This document shows, piece after piece, positions 1 through 36,758 of a DNA stretch of 64,000 nucleotides. The stretch is from positions 62,001-126,000 of the IMG/VR virus record IMGVR_UViG_3300032236_002285. The stretch is one strand, 5' to 3'. The number at the start of each line of letters is the position of its first letter. Within the stretch, counting starts at the first letter, position 1. Under the pieces are notes generated by a model that made no database searches, was not told where the DNA came from, and saw only the letters and a list, made by a program, of their open reading frames with translations. A program made the translations under genes and the position numbers.

Positions 1-114
1 ACGTTACTGCGATTATGGAAAGATTCAAAAACATCTAATCTATAAAAAATCCACACTTACGAAAATCAAGTAAATAAAGGGTTATATATAGATCATAAAA
101 AAAAATAAAAAATT

Positions 115-2611: not shown

Positions 2612-3967
2612 ATGGCTGATAAAAAATCTACACGAGTTAAATTTTCTGAAGAATTACATGATTTACTAAGAATCCTTGAGGATGATGGTAGTTATGTTGC
2701 TTTTGAATTACTTTGGTTAAATGAACCAGATTCAAAATATCATAATGGATTAGATGTTGAAGATGTTGATATATCCAAAACAAGATCTTGCTTAGATGTT
2801 AATATTAGAGGTAGAGTTCATCCTATGAAAATAGAAAACTTTATTAAATATTTTTTCAAAAATTATTTCCAATCAGATGTTGTTTTAGATTTTATTGAAC
2901 AATATAACATATTAGCTGGTGGTGGCGGTGAGTTACAAGATACAAGAACTAAAATTATACCAGAACCTTTTAAATATAATCCTAAAGACGTTAGAAGTAC
3001 ATTTATTTCATTAGTTACTAAAACATATCCACACGGACATGAAGAAGAAGTTATGCAGTTTATGCCTAAATTGGATAAAGATTCTGTGGGTAACTATTAT
3101 AAAATTATTGGTGAGAATCCAACAACTATGTTTACATCTCACTTAGATACTGCTGATAGAAAACAAGGAATCACTAAACTTCTTTCAATGAAAGACGAGA
3201 ATGGTGATGAAATTATCTATACTGATGGTTCTACTATCTTAGGTTCGGATGATAAAGCCGGTGTTGCTGTTATGTTATATATGATGGCTCATAATATACC
3301 GGGTCTTTATTATTTCTTTATGGGTGAAGAAAGAGGTGGTATCGGTTCAGGTTTACTTTCTTCTGTGTATGATGAAACTCCTTATCTTAAAAATATTAAA
3401 AGGTGCGTTTCATTTGATAGAAGAGATGTTAAATCGGTTATTACTTCTCAATTAGGTAGAACTTGTTGTTCTGATACATTTGGTACTGCTTTATGTAAAG
3501 AATACAATGCTCATGGTCTTAAATTATCTTTAGATCCTACGGGTATATACACAGATTCTGCTTCATTTATTGACCAGATTCCTGAGTGTACTAACATTTC
3601 TGTTGGTTATTATAATGAGCATACTGGTAAAGAAAGACAAAACATTAACTATTTAGAGAGATTAGCTAAAGCAAGTGTTTTGGTTAATTGGAATTCTCTA
3701 CCAACTGCTAGAAAGATAGGAATTGATGAGGAAGTTATCAGAAAATATGGTAGATTCATTAATGAGCTAAAGGCTACTCCAATGGGAATTGATATCAAAG
3801 TTATGGCTGAAGAAGGTGGTGGTACTGTAATTGCTTGTGATATGGAAGAGGGTTATATTGATGCAACGTATGAGTCACTGACAATGTTACAATTCTTATT
3901 AAATAAACATAAAATCAATCAAACAGTATATTTTGATGGTGATTATATAAAAATAGATTTATCATAA
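2612..3967 (+). CDS. M20/M28-family Zn peptidase-like protein (paralog 1)
   Basis: FTSHLDT, LGSDDKAG, GEERGGIGS, SFDRR, TDS and HT metal-ligand motifs. Confidence 0.8.
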   Translation: MADKKSTRVKFSEELHDLLRILEDDGSYVAFELLWLNEPDSKYHNGLDVEDVDISKTRSCLDVNIRGRVHPMKIENFIKYFFKNYFQSDVVLDFIEQYNILAGGGGELQDTRTKIIPEPFKYNPKDVRSTFISLVTKTYPHGHEEEVMQFMPKLDKDSVGNYYKIIGENPTTMFTSHLDTADRKQGITKLLSMKDENGDEIIYTDGSTILGSDDKAGVAVMLYMMAHNIPGLYYFFMGEERGGIGSGLLSSVYDETPYLKNIKRCVSFDRRDVKSVITSQLGRTCCSDTFGTALCKEYNAHGLKLSLDPTGIYTDSASFIDQIPECTNISVGYYNEHTGKERQNINYLERLAKASVLVNWNSLPTARKIGIDEEVIRKYGRFINELKATPMGIDIKVMAEEGGGTVIACDMEEGYIDATYESLTMLQFLLNKHKINQTVYFDGDYIKIDLS

Positions 3968-4404
3968 TGAAACTTAAAAAATTCAACCAGTTATTTGAAC
4001 GTGAAGGATTTGATGATATAGACCAACCTTTTGACGAAGAAGACGAATATTCAATTCCTGAAGAAGATGATTATGATCCAAGTAGTGATGATGATATGGA
4101 ACATCTTTGTTACTTATTAAGACAAATGTTTAATAATAGCAATATTGATGTTAGTGTTGAGAATAGCGGACTGGATGTATCTATAACTGCTCAGTTTGAT
4201 AGAAAAGAATCATTAAAAGATGTTATAAGACTATTTGAGATTGTTAAAAAGATTAAAAAAGATATTCTTGCTCAGTATGATTCTTCATATGAGATGTGGG
4301 AAACAAGATCTGGTAATCCTATGATTACTTTTGATTTTAATTTAGATGAAGATTCTGATAAAGATGGTGTTACTACTGGTGATAAAGATGATTATCCTTG
4401 GTAA
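3967..4404 (+). CDS. Hypothetical acidic protein with CTS-like N-terminus
   Basis: ORF overlapping the upstream stop; starts MKLKKFNQLFERE. Confidence 0.7.
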   Translation: MKLKKFNQLFEREGFDDIDQPFDEEDEYSIPEEDDYDPSSDDDMEHLCYLLRQMFNNSNIDVSVENSGLDVSITAQFDRKESLKDVIRLFEIVKKIKKDILAQYDSSYEMWETRSGNPMITFDFNLDEDSDKDGVTTGDKDDYPW

Positions 4405-30970: not shown

Positions 30971-33517
30971 ATGAACATAAAAGTAGTAAAAAGAAATGGG
31001 AAGAAAGAACCGGTAATGTTGGATAAAATCTTAGATAGAATTACACAGCAGACATATGGTTTAGATAAGTTGATTATCCCTTTTGAGGTAGCTCAAAAAG
31101 TAATTGAAGGTATCACTCCGGATATTAAAACATCGACATTAGACCAATTAGCAATGGAAACTGCTGCGGCTTTGGCAACAAAACATCCAGATTACTCAAT
31201 CTTAGCGGCAAGATTAGCAATCACAAACCTACACAAAGAAACTAAAAAGAGTTTTTCTGAAACGGTTACTGATTTGTATAAGTATATTGATCCAAAAACT
31301 GGTAAGCACTCACCAATAGTTTCTGAAGACTTCTATAACATCGTTAAGAAAAACGCAGATGATATTGATTCAGCTATTGTTCACTCAAGAGATCATAACT
31401 TTGATTACTTTGGTTTTAAAACATTAGAAAAATCATATCTTTTGAAACTGGATGGTAAAGTTGCAGAACGTCCTCAATATATGTATATGAGAACAGCTAT
31501 TCAAGTATGGGGTGAGAACTTAGAAAAAGTGATAGAGACTTATAATACACTATCAGAAGGCTACTATACGCATGCAACACCAACTTTATTCAACTCTGGT
31601 ACAACAAGACCACAATTATCATCTTGTTTCTTATTAGATTTAGAATCAGATTCAATTGAAGGTATCTTTAATACTCTTAAAGAATCGGCTCAAATCTCTA
31701 AAAACGCTGGTGGTATTGGTATTGCTTTCACTAAAGTAAGAGCTAAAGGAACTTACATCGCTGGTACTAACGGTACTTCAAACGGTATTATTCCTTTCTT
31801 GAAAATTTATAATGAAACTGCAAGAGCCGTTGACCAAGGTGGTGGAAAACGTAAAGGTTCAATTGCTATCTATATGGAACCTTGGCACTCAGATATTATG
31901 GAGTTCTTAGACCTTCGTAAAAACCAAGGTAAAGATGAAGTTCGTGCTCGTGACTTATTCTTGGCTATGTGGATGAATGATTTGTTTATGGAAAGAGTTG
32001 AACTTGATGAAGATTGGACTTTAATGTGTCCTCATGAGTGTTCTGGCTTAACAGAAACTTATGGTCAAGAGTTTAGAGACCTTTATATTAAATATGAAGG
32101 TATGGGTAAAGGTAAAAAAACTCTTAAAGCAAGAGAAGTTTGGAATAAAATTCTTGAATCTCAAATTGAAACAGGAACTCCTTACATTCTTTACAAAGAC
32201 TCTATCAATGAGAAATCAAACCAAGCTAACATCGGTGTGGTTAGAAGCTCTAACCTTTGTGCTGAAATTGTTGAGGCTACAGGTATTACAAAGACTCAAG
32301 GTGATATTTTGAAAAACAAAGAATTACTTACTAAATTAGGATTAGGTGAGTTTTATGGTCAAGAATCGGTAAATGAAACAGCTGTTTGTAATTTAGCTTC
32401 TATTGCACTTCCTAAGTTTGTTAATAAAAACAAAACTTATAATTTCAATAAATTGTATGAAGTTGCTTATGCTGCTACAATCAACTTAAACAATGTAATT
32501 GATGTGAACTTCTACCCATCACCTGCTGCTAAGTTTTCTAACTTATTACACAGACCAATTGGATTAGGTGTTCAAGGTTTAGCTGATGTATTCTTTATGT
32601 TAGGTTTGCCTTATGAGTCAGACGAAGCTAAAGTATTAAATAAAGAAATCTTTGAAACTATTTATTATGCTTCTATTAAAGCTTCTTGTGACTTAGCTAA
32701 AACAGAAGGCGCTTATGCTACTTATGAAGGATCACCTATCTCTCAAGGTAAATTACAATTCGACTTATGGGGTGTTACTCCAACTAAGAGATGGGATTGG
32801 GATAAATTAAGAGAAGATATTAGTAAGTATGGTGTTAGAAACTCGTTAACAACTTGCATCATGCCTACAGCTTCTACAGCATCTATTTTAGGTAATGAAG
32901 CATCTTGTGAAGCTCAAACTTCAAATATGTACACTCGTTCAGTTCTTTCTGGTACTTTTATCTTAGTTAATAAATATTTAGTTAAAGAATTGATTAAATT
33001 GAACTTATGGGGTGATTCTTTAAGAAAGAAAATTATTGCTGAAAATGGTTCTGTTCAGAATATTCCTGAAATACCAACAAATATTAAAGAAGTATTCAAA
33101 ACCGTTTATGAAATTAAACAAAGGGATGTTATTGATATGGCGGCTGATAGAGGTGCTTTTATCGACCAAACACAATCAATGAATATCTTTATGGATTCTC
33201 CAAACTTTGCGAAATTAACTTCAATGCACTTCTATGGTTGGGGTAGAAGAAACTTCATCTTAAATGCTGATGGTACTCCAAACATTCCTCAAGGTGATAC
33301 AATTGAAATCATTTATGATAAAGATGGTAAACCAAGATGTTATCGTGATAAGAAATCAAATCTTAAAACTGGTATCTATTACTTGAGAAACAAAGGTGCT
33401 ACTGATGCTGTTAAGTTCACAATTCAAGAAGAACAAAAGAAATCAGTTGAAGAACAAATGTCTGAAATCAGTTGTTCACTTGATAATCCAGATGATTGTT
33501 TAGCTTGTGGTGCTTAA
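30971..33517 (+). CDS. nrdA: Class Ia ribonucleotide reductase alpha subunit with ATP cone
   Basis: VVKRNG ATP cone, ATPTLFN, QLSSCF, SNLCAEI, MPTAS, KTGIYYLR, C-terminal CLAC. Confidence 0.97.
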   Translation: MNIKVVKRNGKKEPVMLDKILDRITQQTYGLDKLIIPFEVAQKVIEGITPDIKTSTLDQLAMETAAALATKHPDYSILAARLAITNLHKETKKSFSETVTDLYKYIDPKTGKHSPIVSEDFYNIVKKNADDIDSAIVHSRDHNFDYFGFKTLEKSYLLKLDGKVAERPQYMYMRTAIQVWGENLEKVIETYNTLSEGYYTHATPTLFNSGTTRPQLSSCFLLDLESDSIEGIFNTLKESAQISKNAGGIGIAFTKVRAKGTYIAGTNGTSNGIIPFLKIYNETARAVDQGGGKRKGSIAIYMEPWHSDIMEFLDLRKNQGKDEVRARDLFLAMWMNDLFMERVELDEDWTLMCPHECSGLTETYGQEFRDLYIKYEGMGKGKKTLKAREVWNKILESQIETGTPYILYKDSINEKSNQANIGVVRSSNLCAEIVEATGITKTQGDILKNKELLTKLGLGEFYGQESVNETAVCNLASIALPKFVNKNKTYNFNKLYEVAYAATINLNNVIDVNFYPSPAAKFSNLLHRPIGLGVQGLADVFFMLGLPYESDEAKVLNKEIFETIYYASIKASCDLAKTEGAYATYEGSPISQGKLQFDLWGVTPTKRWDWDKLREDISKYGVRNSLTTCIMPTASTASILGNEASCEAQTSNMYTRSVLSGTFILVNKYLVKELIKLNLWGDSLRKKIIAENGSVQNIPEIPTNIKEVFKTVYEIKQRDVIDMAADRGAFIDQTQSMNIFMDSPNFAKLTSMHFYGWGRRNFILNADGTPNIPQGDTIEIIYDKDGKPRCYRDKKSNLKTGIYYLRNKGATDAVKFTIQEEQKKSVEEQMSEISCSLDNPDDCLACGA

Positions 33518-33594: not shown

Positions 33595-34239
33595 ATGAAT
33601 AAAATTGAAATAGATGGTAAGTTAGATAAAAGCTGGGTCATTGAATTGATGGCTAATGGTTATAACACTTATGATATAGCTACAAACTATGAACTACCAG
33701 AAGAAACTATTTTAGAATGTGCCGATCTTTTAGATAAAGAAGTTCTTTTACAAGGTTTGAACTTTTCAGAGAGTTTTATAGTTAAAGCTATAAAGTCTGA
33801 GTTCTTTTCTACTGAAGATATTGGTGAATTAAATATGACAACTTATTCTAATTTATCAAAAGAGTTTATATCTAAGTATGAAAATTATATTAATTGGAAT
33901 AGAATGATTCTTTATATTTCTACTCAATCAGATTCATTTGATAAATATACTGATATTATTGATAGTAAAGGCTTGTGGAGAGTTATAAGTGTTAATGACT
34001 TACCAATTGATTTTATTAGACAATGGAAAGATAAATTAGATTGGTCTTATTTATCAATGGTTAAATATTTTAGCGAAGATGAAAAGCTAGAATTTGCTGA
34101 TTATATAATGACACCTGTTCAGAAAGATTTGGGTAGTGAAAGCCTTATTAATACTGATGATTTGAAGTTTACTGATAAGATGTCTGATGAAGAATTGGAA
34201 AATTTAATTTACGAAATTTCTAAACATATTGATAAATAA
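33595..34239 (+). CDS. Hypothetical helical-repeat protein (INW/LDW repeats)
   Basis: YINWNRM and KLDWSYLS repeats. Confidence 0.7.
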   Translation: MNKIEIDGKLDKSWVIELMANGYNTYDIATNYELPEETILECADLLDKEVLLQGLNFSESFIVKAIKSEFFSTEDIGELNMTTYSNLSKEFISKYENYINWNRMILYISTQSDSFDKYTDIIDSKGLWRVISVNDLPIDFIRQWKDKLDWSYLSMVKYFSEDEKLEFADYIMTPVQKDLGSESLINTDDLKFTDKMSDEELENLIYEISKHIDK

Positions 34240-34389
34240 AACATATAACTTGTCTGTAAATAATCCACCTTTGAAAAAATTGAAATTTTAGAGGTTGATA
34301 TATACTAAACAAAATAAAAATTGAATTTTTTTTTGAAGATTTAAAACTTTTTGAATCTTCTTATATAAAAGAAAGACAATTAAATTATT

Positions 34390-34454
34390 CCAGTAGTGAA
34401 TTGAAGTGTTACTTCGCTAGGATTGAAAAAACACACTTTGATAACTTACTCTGG
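34390..34454 (+). ncRNA. Short Y-like RNA (Ro-binding stem only)
   Basis: ccag-UAGUGA-auugaagu..UACUUCG..acuuugau-AAC-UUACU-cugg; same architecture as 34470-34756; upstream of Ro60. Confidence 0.7.
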
Positions 34455-34469
34455 TCAACATAATTAAAA

Positions 34470-34756
34470 CGCAAGCATAGCGATAGTTTGAGATACTTCG
34501 ATACAAATATCAATTACTATGACAGCCAAAGTGCCGAGCCGACAGCAAAGCTACCACCGACAAGTGTCACACTTGTAGGTTCAATCTCTAACGAGTTTGG
34601 TAAAATGGTGAAAAGTCCGAAAAGCAACCACGTTAAAGGTCTAAGGAATTCAGAAACTTCCTTTAAATAAAGAACTGAGTGAGATAGTCACTATAACCAT
34701 CGGCAAAGTTTCGGGAGAATTCTTTGTAACGCTTAGGCTAAATTTACTTGTTTGCG
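34470..34756 (+). ncRNA. Long Y-like RNA (287 nt) with a large internal domain
   Basis: cgcaagca/uguuugcg terminal stem; UAGCGA/UUACU; 9-bp uaguuugag/cuuaggcua stem; UACUUCG; T-loop-like UUCAAUC hairpin; GC-enriched relative to flanks. Confidence 0.75.
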
Positions 34757-34764
34757 ATAATTAT

Positions 34765-34807
34765 AAAAGACCAGATTAACAGAAATGTTATCTGGTCTTT
34801 TTTTTTT
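34765..34807 (+). terminator. Terminator between the Y-like RNAs and Ro60
   Basis: aaaagaccagat(t)aaca-gaaa-tgttatctggtcttttttttt. Confidence 0.85.
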
Positions 34808-34841
34808 GTAAAAAAATTAATAAAAATTAAAAATATAGATT

Positions 34842-36293
34842 ATGTCAAAATTTAACACAACAATGCCAAAGGCAAAGACTTTAACTGAAAACTTAGCAGG
34901 TGGACAAGCTTATTCACAATCTGATGAATTGGCTTTGGTATCACTATTATTAACATCATTTGTTAATGACCAGTTTTATAGAAATGCTCAAACATCATTA
35001 GATGAGTTGAGAAGACTTTCTGCTAAAGTGAAAGATAAAGAGTTTGTTGCTAAGGCGGCTATCTTTGCTCGTGACCGTTTCGGTATGAGAAGTATTACTC
35101 ATGCTCTTGCTGGTGAATTAACTTCACAACTATCGGGTGCTGAGTGGGGTAAAAACTTCTACGACAAAGTAGTTGTTCGTGTTGATGATATGACTGAAAT
35201 CATGTCATACTACTTAGCTTATAAGACTTCTAAAGATAGTCCTAAGTTTCCAAACGCCTTGAAGAAAGGTTTTGCTAAGGCTTTTGATAAGTTTGATGGT
35301 TACCAATTAGCTAAGTACAAAGGTGACAACAAAGAAGTGAAACTTGTTGACTTGGTTAACATTGTTCACCCAGTTCCTACCTTTAGAAACAAAGCGGCTC
35401 TTGAGTCACTTGTTAAAGGTGAGTTGAAAAACACACAAACTTGGGAATCTATGTTGTCTCAAGCTGGTCAAGTAGCTGAGTCTGAAGAAGACTTGACTAA
35501 ATTGAAGTCTGATGCTTGGTCTGAATTGATTTCTACTAAGAAGATTGGTTACTTTGCGCTTCTTAGAAACTTGAGAAACATTATCACTCAAGCCCCAACA
35601 GCTGTTAAATCAGCTTGTGAAATGTTAGTTGATGAAAAGTTGATTAAGAACTCAAGAGTTCTTCCATTCCGTTTCTCAACTGCTTATGAAGAAATCAGTA
35701 AGATTGGTTCTTCTAAAGAAGTAAGAGATGTTCTTATGGCAATTAACCAAGCGCTTGATATTTCTGTTGCTAACGTACCAGTATTTGACGGTGAAACACT
35801 TGTTGTTATGGACGTCTCTGGTTCTATGAGTGGTAGACCATCTGAGATTGCGTCATTGTTTGGTGCTATCTTGGCTAAAGTTAATAACTGTGATGTTATG
35901 ACTTTCTCTACTGATGCTAAGTATATGTCTTATAATCCAATGGATTCTGTAATGACTATTAGAAATAGCTTCAGATTCTCTGGTGGTGGAACAAACTTCC
36001 GTTCTATCTTCCAGAAGGCTAACAAGAAGTATGACAGAGTTATTATCTTGTCAGACATGCAAGGTTGGGTGGGTTATACTAGTCCATCTGCGGACTTTTC
36101 TCAGTATAAAAAGAAATACAGTGCTAACCCATTTGTATATTCTTGGGATCTTGCTGGTTACTCTACACTTCAATTCCCAGAACAAAATGTCTTTGCTTTG
36201 GCTGGATTCAGTGATAAGGTTTTTCAAATAATGTCTCTTCTTGAAGAAGATAAACAAGCATTATTGAATGAAGTCAGAAGCATAAAAATATAA
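34842..36293 (+). CDS. rsr: Ro60/TROVE-domain ribonucleoprotein
   Basis: NLAGGQAY, LAKYK, HP, TWE, ALLRNLRNI, VLPFRF; vWA MIDAS DVSGSM, GGT, IILSD. Confidence 0.95.
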   Translation: MSKFNTTMPKAKTLTENLAGGQAYSQSDELALVSLLLTSFVNDQFYRNAQTSLDELRRLSAKVKDKEFVAKAAIFARDRFGMRSITHALAGELTSQLSGAEWGKNFYDKVVVRVDDMTEIMSYYLAYKTSKDSPKFPNALKKGFAKAFDKFDGYQLAKYKGDNKEVKLVDLVNIVHPVPTFRNKAALESLVKGELKNTQTWESMLSQAGQVAESEEDLTKLKSDAWSELISTKKIGYFALLRNLRNIITQAPTAVKSACEMLVDEKLIKNSRVLPFRFSTAYEEISKIGSSKEVRDVLMAINQALDISVANVPVFDGETLVVMDVSGSMSGRPSEIASLFGAILAKVNNCDVMTFSTDAKYMSYNPMDSVMTIRNSFRFSGGGTNFRSIFQKANKKYDRVIILSDMQGWVGYTSPSADFSQYKKKYSANPFVYSWDLAGYSTLQFPEQNVFALAGFSDKVFQIMSLLEEDKQALLNEVRSIKI

Positions 36294-36758
36294 TTATGCT
36301 TCTGGTTTTCTAACCTCATTATTTTCATGTCTTTTTATCCAATTACAATTATGACATAATATTTGATAAGTGTTATCGGTATCCGATAACACTTTTTTGT
36401 AATATGAAAAAACAGATGAACGACTTTTAAGCTCTTTATAACCACCTCCATTTATATGATCTATACATAAAGCTCTCTTGTCTTCAAATCCACATCTTGA
36501 ACAAGAGTGTCCTAGTTTGTCAAATATTTTTTCTTTAATATCACCTAATTTGTCTTTAGACCATTCTTTTTGATATACTCTTCTATAATCCTTATTATTT
36601 TCCTTCCACTCTTTTTGTTTCTCTTTCTTTCTTAAAATTCTTTCAGGATTTTCCAATTTATCCTTTTCATATTTTTTTTTATTTAGAGCTTTAATTTTTT
36701 CTGGATTATTTTTTCTCCATTGTCTAATATATTCTCTTTTTTCTTCTATTGTTTTCAT
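36294..36758 (-). mobile_element. HNH-type (beta-beta-alpha-metal) endonuclease
   Basis: CSRC...IDHI...LCHNCN; basic helical N-terminus. Confidence 0.75.

What the first reader, a model, noticed from the sequence alone, without database searches (positions are those of the whole stretch)
34390..36293. Phage Ro60 ribonucleoprotein locus with two Y-like RNAs of very different size
Seen: a complete TROVE+vWA gene preceded by two non-coding elements with the same skeleton: terminal stem, UAG(U/C)GA, second stem, UACUUCG, insert, second stem, AA(C/U)UUACU, terminal stem. Stem sequences differ but keep pairing (ccag/cugg vs cgcaagca/uguuugcg; auugaagu/acuuugau vs uaguuugag/cuuaggcua), which amounts to covariation between the copies. 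Known: bacterial Ro60 (Rsr) binds Y RNAs encoded next to it, and the Y RNA's second module recruits effectors such as PNPase in Deinococcus. Inference: the phage makes two RNPs, one with a minimal 65-nt RNA and one with a 287-nt RNA, possibly for RNA rescue or decay during infection.
Basis: partly seen in the sequence, partly recalled or inferred. Interest (0 to 1): 0.85.

Follow-up and report, generated by a model that had tools for sequence, protein, structure and literature searches.

The report
Huge-phage Ro60 with two Y RNAs
A giant phage of Bacteroidota carries a Ro60 RNA-binding ring protein preceded by two conserved structured RNAs of the bacterial Y-RNA type; the usual pairing of one small and one large Y RNA is kept, but the large one carries a roughly 230-nt domain of unknown kind where relatives have a tRNA mimic.

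Summary
Ro60 (TROVE+vWA) lies at 34842-36293. It is preceded on the same strand by a 65-nt RNA (34390-34454), a 287-nt RNA (34470-34756) and a strong intrinsic terminator.

Both RNAs are conserved upstream of Ro60 in about 27 related huge-phage contigs. Base-pair covariation is abundant:
- Small RNA: 96% of cells paired, 10 of 19 pairs changed on both sides.
- Large RNA: 97% paired, 27 of 37 pairs.

A covariance model trained only on the large RNA retrieves the small RNAs in related loci, so the shared outer module is real. A model of the small RNA finds 75 hits next to Ro60 genes of Bacteroidota and other bacteria, all on the Ro60 strand. It also finds tandem copies in a crAss-like phage. In those relatives the same module often encloses a canonical tRNA-like YrlA domain.

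The locus is therefore an ordinary rsr-yrl arrangement captured by a huge phage. One thing is unusual: the 220-295-nt RNA has a multi-hairpin insert with no tRNA features and no Rfam match, and it was found only in this phage clade. Binding to Ro60 and function are inferred, not shown.

The parts
34254..34307 (+). Conserved promoter-like block (CTGTAAATAATCCACC ... GGTTGATATATAC). It contains an 8-9 bp hairpin, CCACCUUU/AGAGGUUG.
   Evidence: The block is conserved upstream of element 1 in most related loci. The same bipartite motif, ATCCAC-N28-34-ATATAT, occurs only once more in the window, directly upstream of the major head protein gene at 49-89 (2 found, 0.11 expected). The hairpin folds with z = -3.35. 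It shows only modest covariation and is lost in L015/L018/L028. Promoter function is inferred.
34335..34372 (+). Inverted repeat (GAAGAUU...AAUCUUC) around a conserved AAACTTTTT, followed by TATATAAAA. This insert between the promoter-like block and element 1 is optional.
   Evidence: It folds with z = -3.3. AAACTTTT-N9-14-ATAAAA occurs once in the window. The insert is present in most related loci but absent in L001 and L011, where the promoter-like block lies 17-29 nt from element 1. Function is unknown.
34390..34454 (+). Small Y-type RNA of 65 nt (YrlB-like). It consists of P1, a bulged U, the AG.GA/UU.CU bulged helix, P2, UUAC, a short V hairpin (UUCG...UGAA) and an A-rich stretch.
   Evidence: Alignment of 19 orthologues: 96.4% of cells paired, 10 of 19 pairs with changes on both sides, and P2 8 of 10; slid controls give 28-50% paired. 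Model R1 scores 80 bits here and hits nothing else in the 64-kb window.
34470..34756 (+). Large Y-type RNA of 287 nt. It has the same outer module: P1 34470-77/34749-56, UAGCGA, P2 34484-92/34732-40, AUACUUCG and AAUUUACU. The module encloses a multi-hairpin insert of about 230 nt: PV 34495-98/34529-32, P3 34533-34/34550-51, P4 34552-55/34607-10 with a variable hairpin, single-stranded GUGAAAAGUCCG, P5 34627-29/34638-40, P6 34643-48/34658-63, P7 34678-82/34688-92 and P8 34703-08/34722-27.
   Evidence: Orthologues are 216-295 nt long. RNAalifold was run per clade and I made my own pair counts. On the alignment fitted to model R2, 96.8% of cells are paired and 27 of 37 pairs changed on both sides; slid controls give at most 12. 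P5, P6, PV and the J pairs are not in that 37-pair model and rest on my own reading and counts. nhmmer and R2 find full-length copies only in the huge-phage clade. There is no Rfam hit and no tRNA.
34765..34806 (+). Intrinsic terminator: a stem of about 12-16 bp, GACCAGAU.../...AUCUGGUC, followed by U10.
   Evidence: dG -18.3 kcal/mol, z -6.4. It is conserved in related loci with an invariant lower stem and a covarying upper stem.
34842..36293 (+). Ro60 (TROVE + vWA/MIDAS), 483 aa.
   Evidence: Pfam TROVE 6.7e-18; vWA_Ro60 5.3e-06 at 26.9 bits, just under the 27.7 cut-off. PHROG 850 'RNA-binding protein', 3.9e-43. The best solved relative is phiLo Ro60 (9KOP/9L5Y), E 1.2e-22 over the full length. 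The AF2 model has pLDDT 78.7, and the 13 best PDB matches are all Ro60 structures with TM 0.65-0.72. MIDAS residues D324, S326, S328, T384 and D405 are invariant in 9 relatives.

Best explanation
This is the Ro60/Y-RNA module (rsr-yrl locus) of a huge phage. Its only close GenBank relative is a 634,780-bp uncultured phage, and its Ro60 is closest to those of Bacteroidota.

One transcription unit on the + strand probably runs from a phage promoter-like block through a 65-nt RNA and a 287-nt RNA to a strong terminator. Ro60 follows 36 nt later, probably expressed by read-through.

Both RNAs share the same outer module. A closing stem is followed by a bulged U. Next comes a short helix formed by 5'-AGYGA and 3'-UUACU with a central mismatch and a 2-3-nt bulge on the 3' side. 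A second stem follows, then (G/A)UAC-UUCG, which opens a small hairpin. By analogy with Xenopus, Deinococcus, Salmonella and phiLo Ro60, the ring protein binds this module on its outer face.

The small RNA is the minimal partner, which stabilises Ro60 and gates its cavity. In the large RNA the module presents a roughly 230-nt multi-hairpin domain. That domain sits where relatives carry a tRNA-like YrlA domain, and it most likely tethers Ro60 to another factor: an exoribonuclease such as PNPase, or a phage or host protein not yet identified.

Shown here: gene identity and fold, RNA conservation, structure by covariation, the shared module, strand- and position-linked association with Ro60 across phages and bacteria, and restriction of the large insert to one phage clade.

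Inferred: transcription, processing into discrete RNAs, Ro60 binding, and the tethering role.
For: Ro60 identity and fold.

Phage context (major head protein, DNA polymerase, DnaB, RNR, HNH) and identity to a 476-kb IMG/VR contig. The closest GenBank record is LR745206.1, 634,780 bp. This is consistent with the 634-kb Mahaphage genome with a predicted Bacteroidetes host (PMC7162821).

Both RNAs lie upstream of Ro60 on the same strand in about 27 loci, always after the RNR large-subunit gene.

Covariation.

Shared module: R2, trained on element 2 alone, retrieves element-1 orthologues in related loci.

Family link:
- R1 gives 75 of 75 hits on the Ro60 strand, almost all upstream, in 79 bacterial loci.
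- R1 gives 3 tandem hits beside the TROVE gene of crAss-like phage cr112_1.
- In L023, L026, L031 and the cultured Hymenobacter glacieicola (L086), the same UAGUGA/UUACUUC/UUAUCUC module encloses T-arm, closed acceptor-stem and D-arm elements typical of YrlA.
- A T-loop motif lies upstream of Ro60 in 43 of 70 bacterial loci.

Literature:
- YUAY begins the V arm of YrlA.
- At least two Y RNAs per species, one of them a simple hairpin.
- Y RNAs are co-transcribed with rsr and then processed (PMC4201824).
- phiLo Ro60 binds two upstream Yrl RNAs and PNPase in vitro (PMC12135203).
Against: There is no expression or binding data of any kind.

The published 5' motif GNCGAAN0-1G is only partly present: AGCGAUAG in element 2 and AGUGAAUUG in element 1.

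R1 does not detect the experimentally validated phiLo Yrl RNAs.

Only 3 of 8 basic residues shown to matter for RNA binding in phiLo Ro60 are identical here, from my mapping of the alignment onto the residues.

Neither RNA has a tRNA-like domain, the hallmark of YrlA.

The folding energy of element 2 is not better than shuffles.

The alignment used was fitted to the model, which favours pairing.

A strong terminator between the RNAs and Ro60 leaves Ro60 expression unexplained.
Confidence: 0.77

Rival explanations
1. The two elements are cis-acting parts of the Ro60 mRNA leader, not stable trans-acting RNAs. Ro60 would bind Y-like decoys in its own 5' UTR and, together with the terminator, set its own expression by attenuation or autoregulation.
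For: The RNAs, the terminator and the Ro60 start codon lie within 450 nt on one strand. Only 36 nt, with no recognisable promoter, separate the terminator from the ATG. Ro60 therefore probably depends on read-through of this unit.
Against: In Mycobacterium smegmatis the Y RNAs lie upstream of rsr, are processed from a common precursor and accumulate as Ro60-bound RNAs (PMC4201824). In crAss-like phage cr112_1 the same RNAs lie downstream of the TROVE gene, beyond an HNH gene, where they cannot be a leader. Relatives carry 2-5 tandem copies. The two readings are not exclusive.
Confidence: 0.12
2. The 230-nt insert of element 2 is an independent functional RNA: a new structured ncRNA, possibly catalytic or a mimic of another cellular RNA. 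It merely uses a Y-RNA stem as a protective clamp, and its function does not involve recruiting a partner to Ro60.
For: The insert has at least six covarying hairpins and invariant single-stranded blocks, including GUGAAAAAGUCCG and the P3 loop AGCGACAGC. It has no counterpart in bacterial relatives and no Rfam match.
Against: It always occurs inside the Ro module and next to Ro60; no free-standing copy exists in the window or in any locus. The known logic of Y RNAs is exactly a Ro-binding stem plus a second, effector-specific module (PMC4201824).
Confidence: 0.1
3. The similarity of the two elements is a chance resemblance in AT-rich intergenic DNA, or the region encodes a small protein (ORF 34488-34670, 60 aa, TTG start).
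For: The ORF exists. The genome is 29% G+C, so short AT-rich motifs recur.
Against: The composite motif has zero expectation in shuffles. Orthologues differ in length by amounts that are not multiples of three (287, 259, 279, 273, 266, 264 nt). Substitutions are compensatory in helices. Hits are strand-specific, 75 of 75.
Confidence: 0.01

Closest known systems
YrlA / YrlB of Salmonella Typhimurium and Mycobacterium smegmatis, and the YrlA family found near Ro60 in 254 bacteria and 22 phages (Chen et al. 2014, PMC4201824)
   Same: The RNAs are encoded within a few hundred nt of Ro60 on the same strand. There are at least two per locus, one elaborate and one a simple hairpin. The 5' and 3' ends pair into a stem carrying a conserved 5'-strand motif. 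A YUAY (here UUAC/AUAC) opens the V hairpin. The RNAs are co-transcribed with rsr. Relatives found here (L023, L026, L031, L086) join the same module to a T-arm, closed acceptor stem and D-arm.
   Different: Neither window RNA has a tRNA-like domain. The large RNA instead has a roughly 230-nt multi-hairpin insert and is about twice the usual YrlA size; R1 and R2 hits in relatives are mostly 60-150 nt. The 5' motif is UAG(U/C)GA rather than GNCGAA. Here the 3' strand (UUACU/UUAUCU) is conserved as well, whereas only the 5' strand is recognisable in Salmonella and Mycobacterium.
Thermus phage phiLo Ro60 with Yrl1 and Yrl2 (PMC12135203; PDB 9KOP, 9L5Y)
   Same: This is the closest solved protein (E 1.2e-22, full length; Foldseek TM about 0.7). 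It is a phage Ro60 with two Y-like RNAs encoded directly upstream. The RNAs have a stem-bulge-stem design with a (C/U)GA(A/U) core. The K141-K142 pair and K192/K193 are conserved.
   Different: Identity is only about 24%. R1 does not detect the phiLo RNAs, and both of them are small. Five of the eight basic residues tested in phiLo are not conserved here. Binding is demonstrated for phiLo and not for this phage.
Deinococcus radiodurans Rsr-Yrn1-PNPase (RYPER) and Yrn2
   Same: The design is two-module: a Ro-binding bulged helix in which both strands are conserved, plus an effector module. A second, simpler Y RNA is also present. This is the mechanistic model adopted here.
   Different: No sequence relationship was detectable. 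The effector of the phage RNA is unknown. No PNPase or RtcB gene was identified among the roughly 30 window ORFs that were scanned.
Hymenobacter glacieicola rsr locus (L086, NZ_BMGS01000016.1), found here
   Same: Ro60 is about 53% identical. Upstream of it lie two small Y-like RNAs and one larger one, then a terminator, then Ro60. The module is the same: UAGUAA ... GGUUACUUC ... UUAUCUC.
   Different: Its larger RNA, about 150 nt, is a canonical tRNA mimic with a GCGGGUUCGAAUCCCGC T-arm. The window's larger RNA is not.
Metazoan Y RNAs
   Same: Both have a terminal stem with a bulged nucleotide and an asymmetric internal loop as the Ro60 site, with a variable module beyond it.
   Different: The conserved sequence differs (GGUCCGA/UUGACU, from my own knowledge). 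Metazoan Y RNAs are separate Pol III genes and are not linked to the Ro60 gene.

Membership tests
Ro60 / TROVE protein | TROVE (HEAT-repeat) domain followed by a vWA domain | tested here: met
   Pfam TROVE 6.7e-18. vWA_Ro60 5.3e-06, at 26.9 bits just below the curated 27.7 cut-off. VWA_CoxE 8.6e-06. PHROG 850, 3.9e-43.
Ro60 / TROVE protein | MIDAS motif DxSxS...T...D in the vWA domain | tested here: met
   D324, S326, S328, T384 and D405 are invariant across 9 relatives. DVSGSM aligns with DVSGSM of phiLo Ro60.
Ro60 / TROVE protein | Ring-shaped Ro60 fold | tested here: met
   AF2 model pLDDT 78.7, pTM 0.68. The 13 best PDB matches are all Ro60 structures (phiLo, human, Xenopus, Deinococcus), with TM 0.65-0.72 over roughly the full length. 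The next hit is at E 2e-3.
Ro60 / TROVE protein | Basic residues shown by mutagenesis to contact Y-like RNA in phiLo Ro60 (R137, K141, K142, R163, R169, R173, R178, K193) | tested here: inconclusive
   I mapped the residues through the alignment, with a chain offset of 8. K141, K142 and K192 are conserved. P137, N163 (K164 adjacent), V169, N173 and V178 are not.
Bacterial Y RNA, YrlA type | Encoded within 4 kb of Ro60 on the same strand | tested here: met
   Both RNAs lie 86-452 nt upstream of the Ro60 start on the + strand. The arrangement is conserved in about 27 phage loci. Module hits are on the Ro60 strand in 75 of 75 cases in bacterial loci.
Bacterial Y RNA, YrlA type | GNCGAAN0-1G motif near the 5' end (proposed Ro60 contact) | tested here: inconclusive
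   Element 2 has AGCGAUAG and element 1 has AGUGAAUUG. The (C/U)GA core is kept while the flanking G and A are not. The family-wide form here is UAG(U/C)(G/A)A.
Bacterial Y RNA, YrlA type | YUAY opening a V stem-loop | tested here: met
   UUAC (element 1) or AUAC (element 2) is followed by UUCG, which pairs with a downstream (C/U)GAA or AAGU. It is invariant in 19 orthologues. The same UUACUUCG opens the V arm of the tRNA-like relatives.
Bacterial Y RNA, YrlA type | tRNA-like domain (T-arm, closed acceptor stem, D-arm) | tested here: not met
   There is no ARAGORN or Rfam tRNA hit in the window, and no conserved T-loop in the element 2 alignment. The window's GGUUCAAUC lies in a window-specific insertion. 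Relatives L023, L026, L031 and L086 do have the domain.
Bacterial Y RNA, simple-hairpin type (YrlB / Yrn2) | Long hairpin without a tRNA-like domain, encoded beside the larger Y RNA and Ro60 | tested here: met
   Element 1 has 19 supported pairs and a 34-nt apical region with a 4-bp mini-hairpin. The published 'small pyrimidine-rich loop' is not reproduced; the loop here is A-rich.
Any Y RNA | Bound and stabilised by Ro60 in vivo | not testable with these tools
   No expression or binding data are available for this uncultured phage.
Rfam families (Y_RNA and all others) | Score at or above the gathering threshold of a curated covariance model | tested here: not met
   There were no hits at gathering threshold in the window. 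At E<=10 the only hits are terminator look-alikes and noise.

The most novel reading that the evidence does not exclude
In this huge-phage clade the tRNA-mimic domain of YrlA has been replaced by a new 160-230-nt RNA domain. That domain would redirect Ro60 to a partner other than the tRNA-recognising or PNPase machinery. Alternatively, the domain is itself an active RNA that uses Ro60 as a chaperone. Either way these very large phages would have a dedicated RNP for manipulating host or phage RNA during long infections.
Probability: 0.3. Interest if true: 0.7.

Novelty: new variant of a known kind. Interest (0 to 1): 0.45.

Why it matters
What bacterial and phage Ro60 RNPs do is still largely open. 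The second module of a Y RNA is thought to decide which effector Ro60 works with.

This locus offers a natural experiment. The Ro-binding module is the same as in Bacteroidota and crAss-like phages, but the tRNA mimic is exchanged for a different, well-conserved structured domain, in the largest known phages. Identifying what that domain binds would test the tether model outside Deinococcus and Salmonella. It could also reveal a new Ro60 partner.

A practical by-product is a covariance model of the module. It detects unannotated Y-type RNAs next to Ro60 in many Bacteroidota, in other phyla and in crAss-like phages, where no Rfam model reports them.

Tried and rejected
1. Rfam at gathering threshold and at E<=10, on the window and on an orthologue, gave nothing relevant. 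The tRNA-like relatives matched only the generic tRNA model.

2. ARAGORN found no tRNA or tmRNA in the window.

3. I asked whether the window's GGUUCAAUC is a T-loop. It lies in a 40-nt insertion unique to this phage and has no flanking stem.

4. The invariant GUGAAAAAGUCCG recalled RNase P P4 and SRP sequences from memory. No Rfam support followed and no complementary site exists in the window, so I dropped it.

5. A possible nested 'mini Y' is formed by CAUAG and the conserved ACUAUGA block. R1 aligns it at only 8.4 bits and the block is absent in L008-L010 and L028, so it is not a second module.

6. The large RNA upstream of L032 Ro60 looked similar by eye, but R2 does not recognise it as full length. 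I leave it unconfirmed.

7. R1 on phiLo did not detect Yrl1 or Yrl2.

8. AAACTTTT-N-ATAAAA as a general phage promoter: it occurs only once in the window.

9. The automatic all-against-all helix search on a MAFFT alignment was too noisy. I replaced it with manual helices and the CM-fitted alignment.

10. No conserved protein partner is adjacent. Only the RNR large subunit upstream is syntenic. The 214-aa ORF is confined to the closest relatives, and the downstream HNH and other genes are unique to this phage.

11. The small ORF 34488-34670 is rejected as coding.
Full report
WHAT IS THERE

The window is phage DNA with standard genetic code and 29% G+C. It encodes a major head protein, DNA polymerase, DnaB-type helicase, RecA-like ATPase, ribonucleotide reductase, DNA methylases and HNH endonucleases. 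Around the finding it is identical to a 476-kb IMG/VR contig (L002).

Its only close GenBank relative is LR745206.1, an uncultured phage of 634,780 bp. That record is 76% identical in DNA across the locus and 82% identical in Ro60 protein. Its length fits the 634-kb Mahaphage genome of Al-Shayeb et al., predicted to infect Bacteroidetes (PMC7162821). That paper does not mention Ro60.

The features lie on the + strand in this order:
- RNR large subunit, 30971-33517.
- A 214-aa ORF of unknown function.
- A conserved promoter-like block, 34254-34307.
- An optional inverted repeat.
- Element 1, 34390-34454.
- A 15-nt spacer.
- Element 2, 34470-34756.
- A strong intrinsic terminator, 34765-34806 (dG -18.3, z -6.4).
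- Ro60, 34842-36293, which starts 36 nt after the terminator.

THE PROTEIN

The 483-aa ORF is a complete Ro60:
- Pfam TROVE matches; the Ro60-type vWA domain scores just below its curated cut-off.
- PHROG 850 matches.
- It aligns over its full length to Thermus phage phiLo Ro60, the best solved relative, at E 1.2e-22.
- The MIDAS residues are invariant.
- The AF2 model's 13 best PDB matches are all Ro60 rings, with TM 0.65-0.72.

Of eight basic residues shown to matter for RNA binding in phiLo, three are identical here by my mapping.

THE OBSERVATION

One refinement applies. UAGYGA and UUACU are not independent single-stranded motifs; they face each other. A-U and G-C pairs are followed by a Y.N mismatch, which pairs in only 12 of 19 small-RNA orthologues and never in the large RNA. 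G.U and A-U pairs then follow. One U is bulged on the 5' side and AA(C/U) on the 3' side. This is the stem-bulge-stem layout expected of a Ro60 site.

COMPARATIVE SUPPORT

A scan of viral contigs with the protein gave 32 loci. In all loci of the close clade that have sequence upstream, both elements are present in the same order and on the same strand, after the RNR gene.

For element 1 (19 sequences):
- 96.4% of cells pair.
- 10 of 19 pairs show changes on both sides, and 8 of 10 in P2.
- Slid controls give 28-50% paired.

For element 2, orthologues range from 216 to 295 nt because hairpins are inserted, deleted or extended. These length differences are not multiples of three, which excludes coding. 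RNAalifold per clade and my own counts support P1, P2, P3, P4, P6, P7 and P8. I also read a closing helix of the V region (ACUU/AAGU) and a P5 hairpin by eye.

A covariance model was built on 14 sequences (R2) and its hits were aligned. On that alignment 96.8% of cells pair and 27 of 37 pairs changed on both sides. Slid controls give at most 12. The caveat is that the alignment was fitted to the model.

Folding energy alone does not distinguish element 2 from shuffles.

ONE FAMILY, TWO SIZES

R2 contains no small-RNA sequence, yet it retrieves the element-1 orthologues in related phage loci by matching only its outer positions. The window's own element 1 did not pass that search's E-value cut-off.

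R1, the small-RNA model, finds one copy in the 64-kb window. It also finds new copies upstream of more distant phage Ro60 genes: L001, L023 (3), L026 (3), L031 (2) and L032 (1).

LINK TO KNOWN Y RNAs

In L023, L026 and L031 the same module encloses a V hairpin, a GGUUCGAAUCC T-arm, a closed acceptor-like stem and a UAGCUCA...GAGC D-arm. The module there reads P1, UAGUGA, P2, GUUACUUCG at the 5' side and AUUUUCUC, P1' at the 3' side. The enclosed elements follow the circularly permuted tRNA order described for YrlA (PMC4201824).

A genome scan gave 79 bacterial loci with Ro60 40-60% identical to the window's. They are mostly Bacteroidota MAGs, but include the isolates Hymenobacter glacieicola and Lewinella sp. 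W8.

R1 gives 75 hits in these loci, all on the Ro60 strand and almost all upstream. In 43 of 70 loci a T-loop motif also lies upstream.

In H. glacieicola the order is two small RNAs, one roughly 150-nt tRNA-like YrlA, a terminator, then Ro60. That layout matches the window's.

crAss-like phage cr112_1 has three tandem copies in an unannotated gap downstream of its TROVE and HNH genes.

The window locus is thus a member of a widespread Ro60-Y RNA system that the phage lineage shares with its probable host phylum.

WHAT IS UNUSUAL

Full-length relatives of element 2 are confined to the huge-phage clade: 27 loci by nhmmer, none in distant phage loci or in the 79 bacterial loci. The insert has no tRNA features and no Rfam match.

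It keeps invariant single-stranded blocks, GUGAAAAAGUCCG and the P3 loop AGCGACAGC. These are candidates for protein contact.

Typical family members found here are mostly 60-150 nt, so this RNA is about twice the usual size. This phage clade has no tRNA-like Y RNA at the locus.

MECHANISM

By analogy with Deinococcus, Salmonella and phiLo (PMC4201824, PMC12135203), I take Ro60 to bind the shared module. The small RNA would be the minimal stabilising and gating partner. The large RNA would be a tether that brings a second factor to Ro60.

The promoter-like block is shared with the major head gene. This suggests, weakly, strong late expression.

Ro60 itself probably depends on read-through of the terminator. 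That leaves room for a cis-regulatory component (rival 1). None of these steps is demonstrated.

VERDICT

The finding is real and correctly interpreted in kind. The locus as such is ordinary: two Y RNAs beside Ro60 is the rule, and phage Ro60 genes are common, with 101 GenBank phage records. The large RNA's insert is a new variant worth an experiment.

Noticed in passing
window 37-92 and 34251-34307: The same bipartite block, CT(A/G)TAAA(A/T)AATCCAC ... about 29 nt with a small hairpin ... GGTT(G)ATATATA, precedes both the major head protein gene (ATG at 115) and the Y-RNA unit. It occurs nowhere else in the window. It is probably a phage-specific, possibly late, promoter class.
   Followed up: partly
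window 34765-34806 versus 34447-34456; related loci: The lower terminator stem GACCAGA/UCUGGUC is invariant across loci that are only 70-80% identical, while its upper stem covaries. Its 3' arm repeats the conserved 3' end of element 1 (CUCUGGUC). Element 1's 3' end could therefore pair with the terminator's 5' arm. The meaning is unknown; processing signal or alternative pairing are possibilities.
   Followed up: partly
L028, L029, L030: 3001-5133: In three related contigs the Ro60 gene is split into 156-aa and 324-aa ORFs by a roughly 680-nt insertion. The insertion encodes a 224-aa protein with a weak NUMOD3 motif match (E 2.3e-4, no stretch significant on its own). This suggests a homing endonuclease, possibly within an intron, inside Ro60.
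   Followed up: partly
L116 (crAss-like phage cr112_1, NC_055881.1) 3941-4194: Three tandem Y-type RNAs with the UAGUG...UUACUUC...UUCU module lie in an unannotated gap downstream of the TROVE and HNH genes. The record does not annotate them.
   Followed up: partly
L086 (Hymenobacter glacieicola) 2636-2935; L023, L026, L031 upstream of Ro60: These loci carry arrays of 3-5 Y-type RNAs per locus, mixing simple hairpins with tRNA-like YrlA forms. L031 has two tRNA-like copies. One L023 copy has a T-arm and acceptor stem but no D-arm.
   Followed up: partly
window 34559-34600: A roughly 40-nt insertion in the P4 variable region of element 2 is unique to this phage. It includes a perfect 6-bp hairpin, ACAAGU/ACUUGU, and a T-loop-like GGUUCAAUC without a stem.
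   Followed up: no
window 34514-34522 and orthologues: A conserved AACUAUGA block inside element 2 is complementary to CAUAG, at the P1/UAG junction or at the start of P2. It is absent in L008-L010 and L028. It may form an alternative pairing that competes with the Ro module.
   Followed up: partly
window 36294-36758 (- strand): An HNH / endonuclease VII-like gene abuts the Ro60 stop codon on the opposite strand and has no counterpart in any related locus. It looks like a recent mobile insertion. crAss-like phages also have an HNH gene next to TROVE.
   Followed up: partly
window 33595-34239: A 214-aa ORF (PHROG 3532, unknown function) sits between RNR and the Y RNAs only in the closest relatives (L003-L005, L020, L033). 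It is absent in the rest of the clade.
   Followed up: partly
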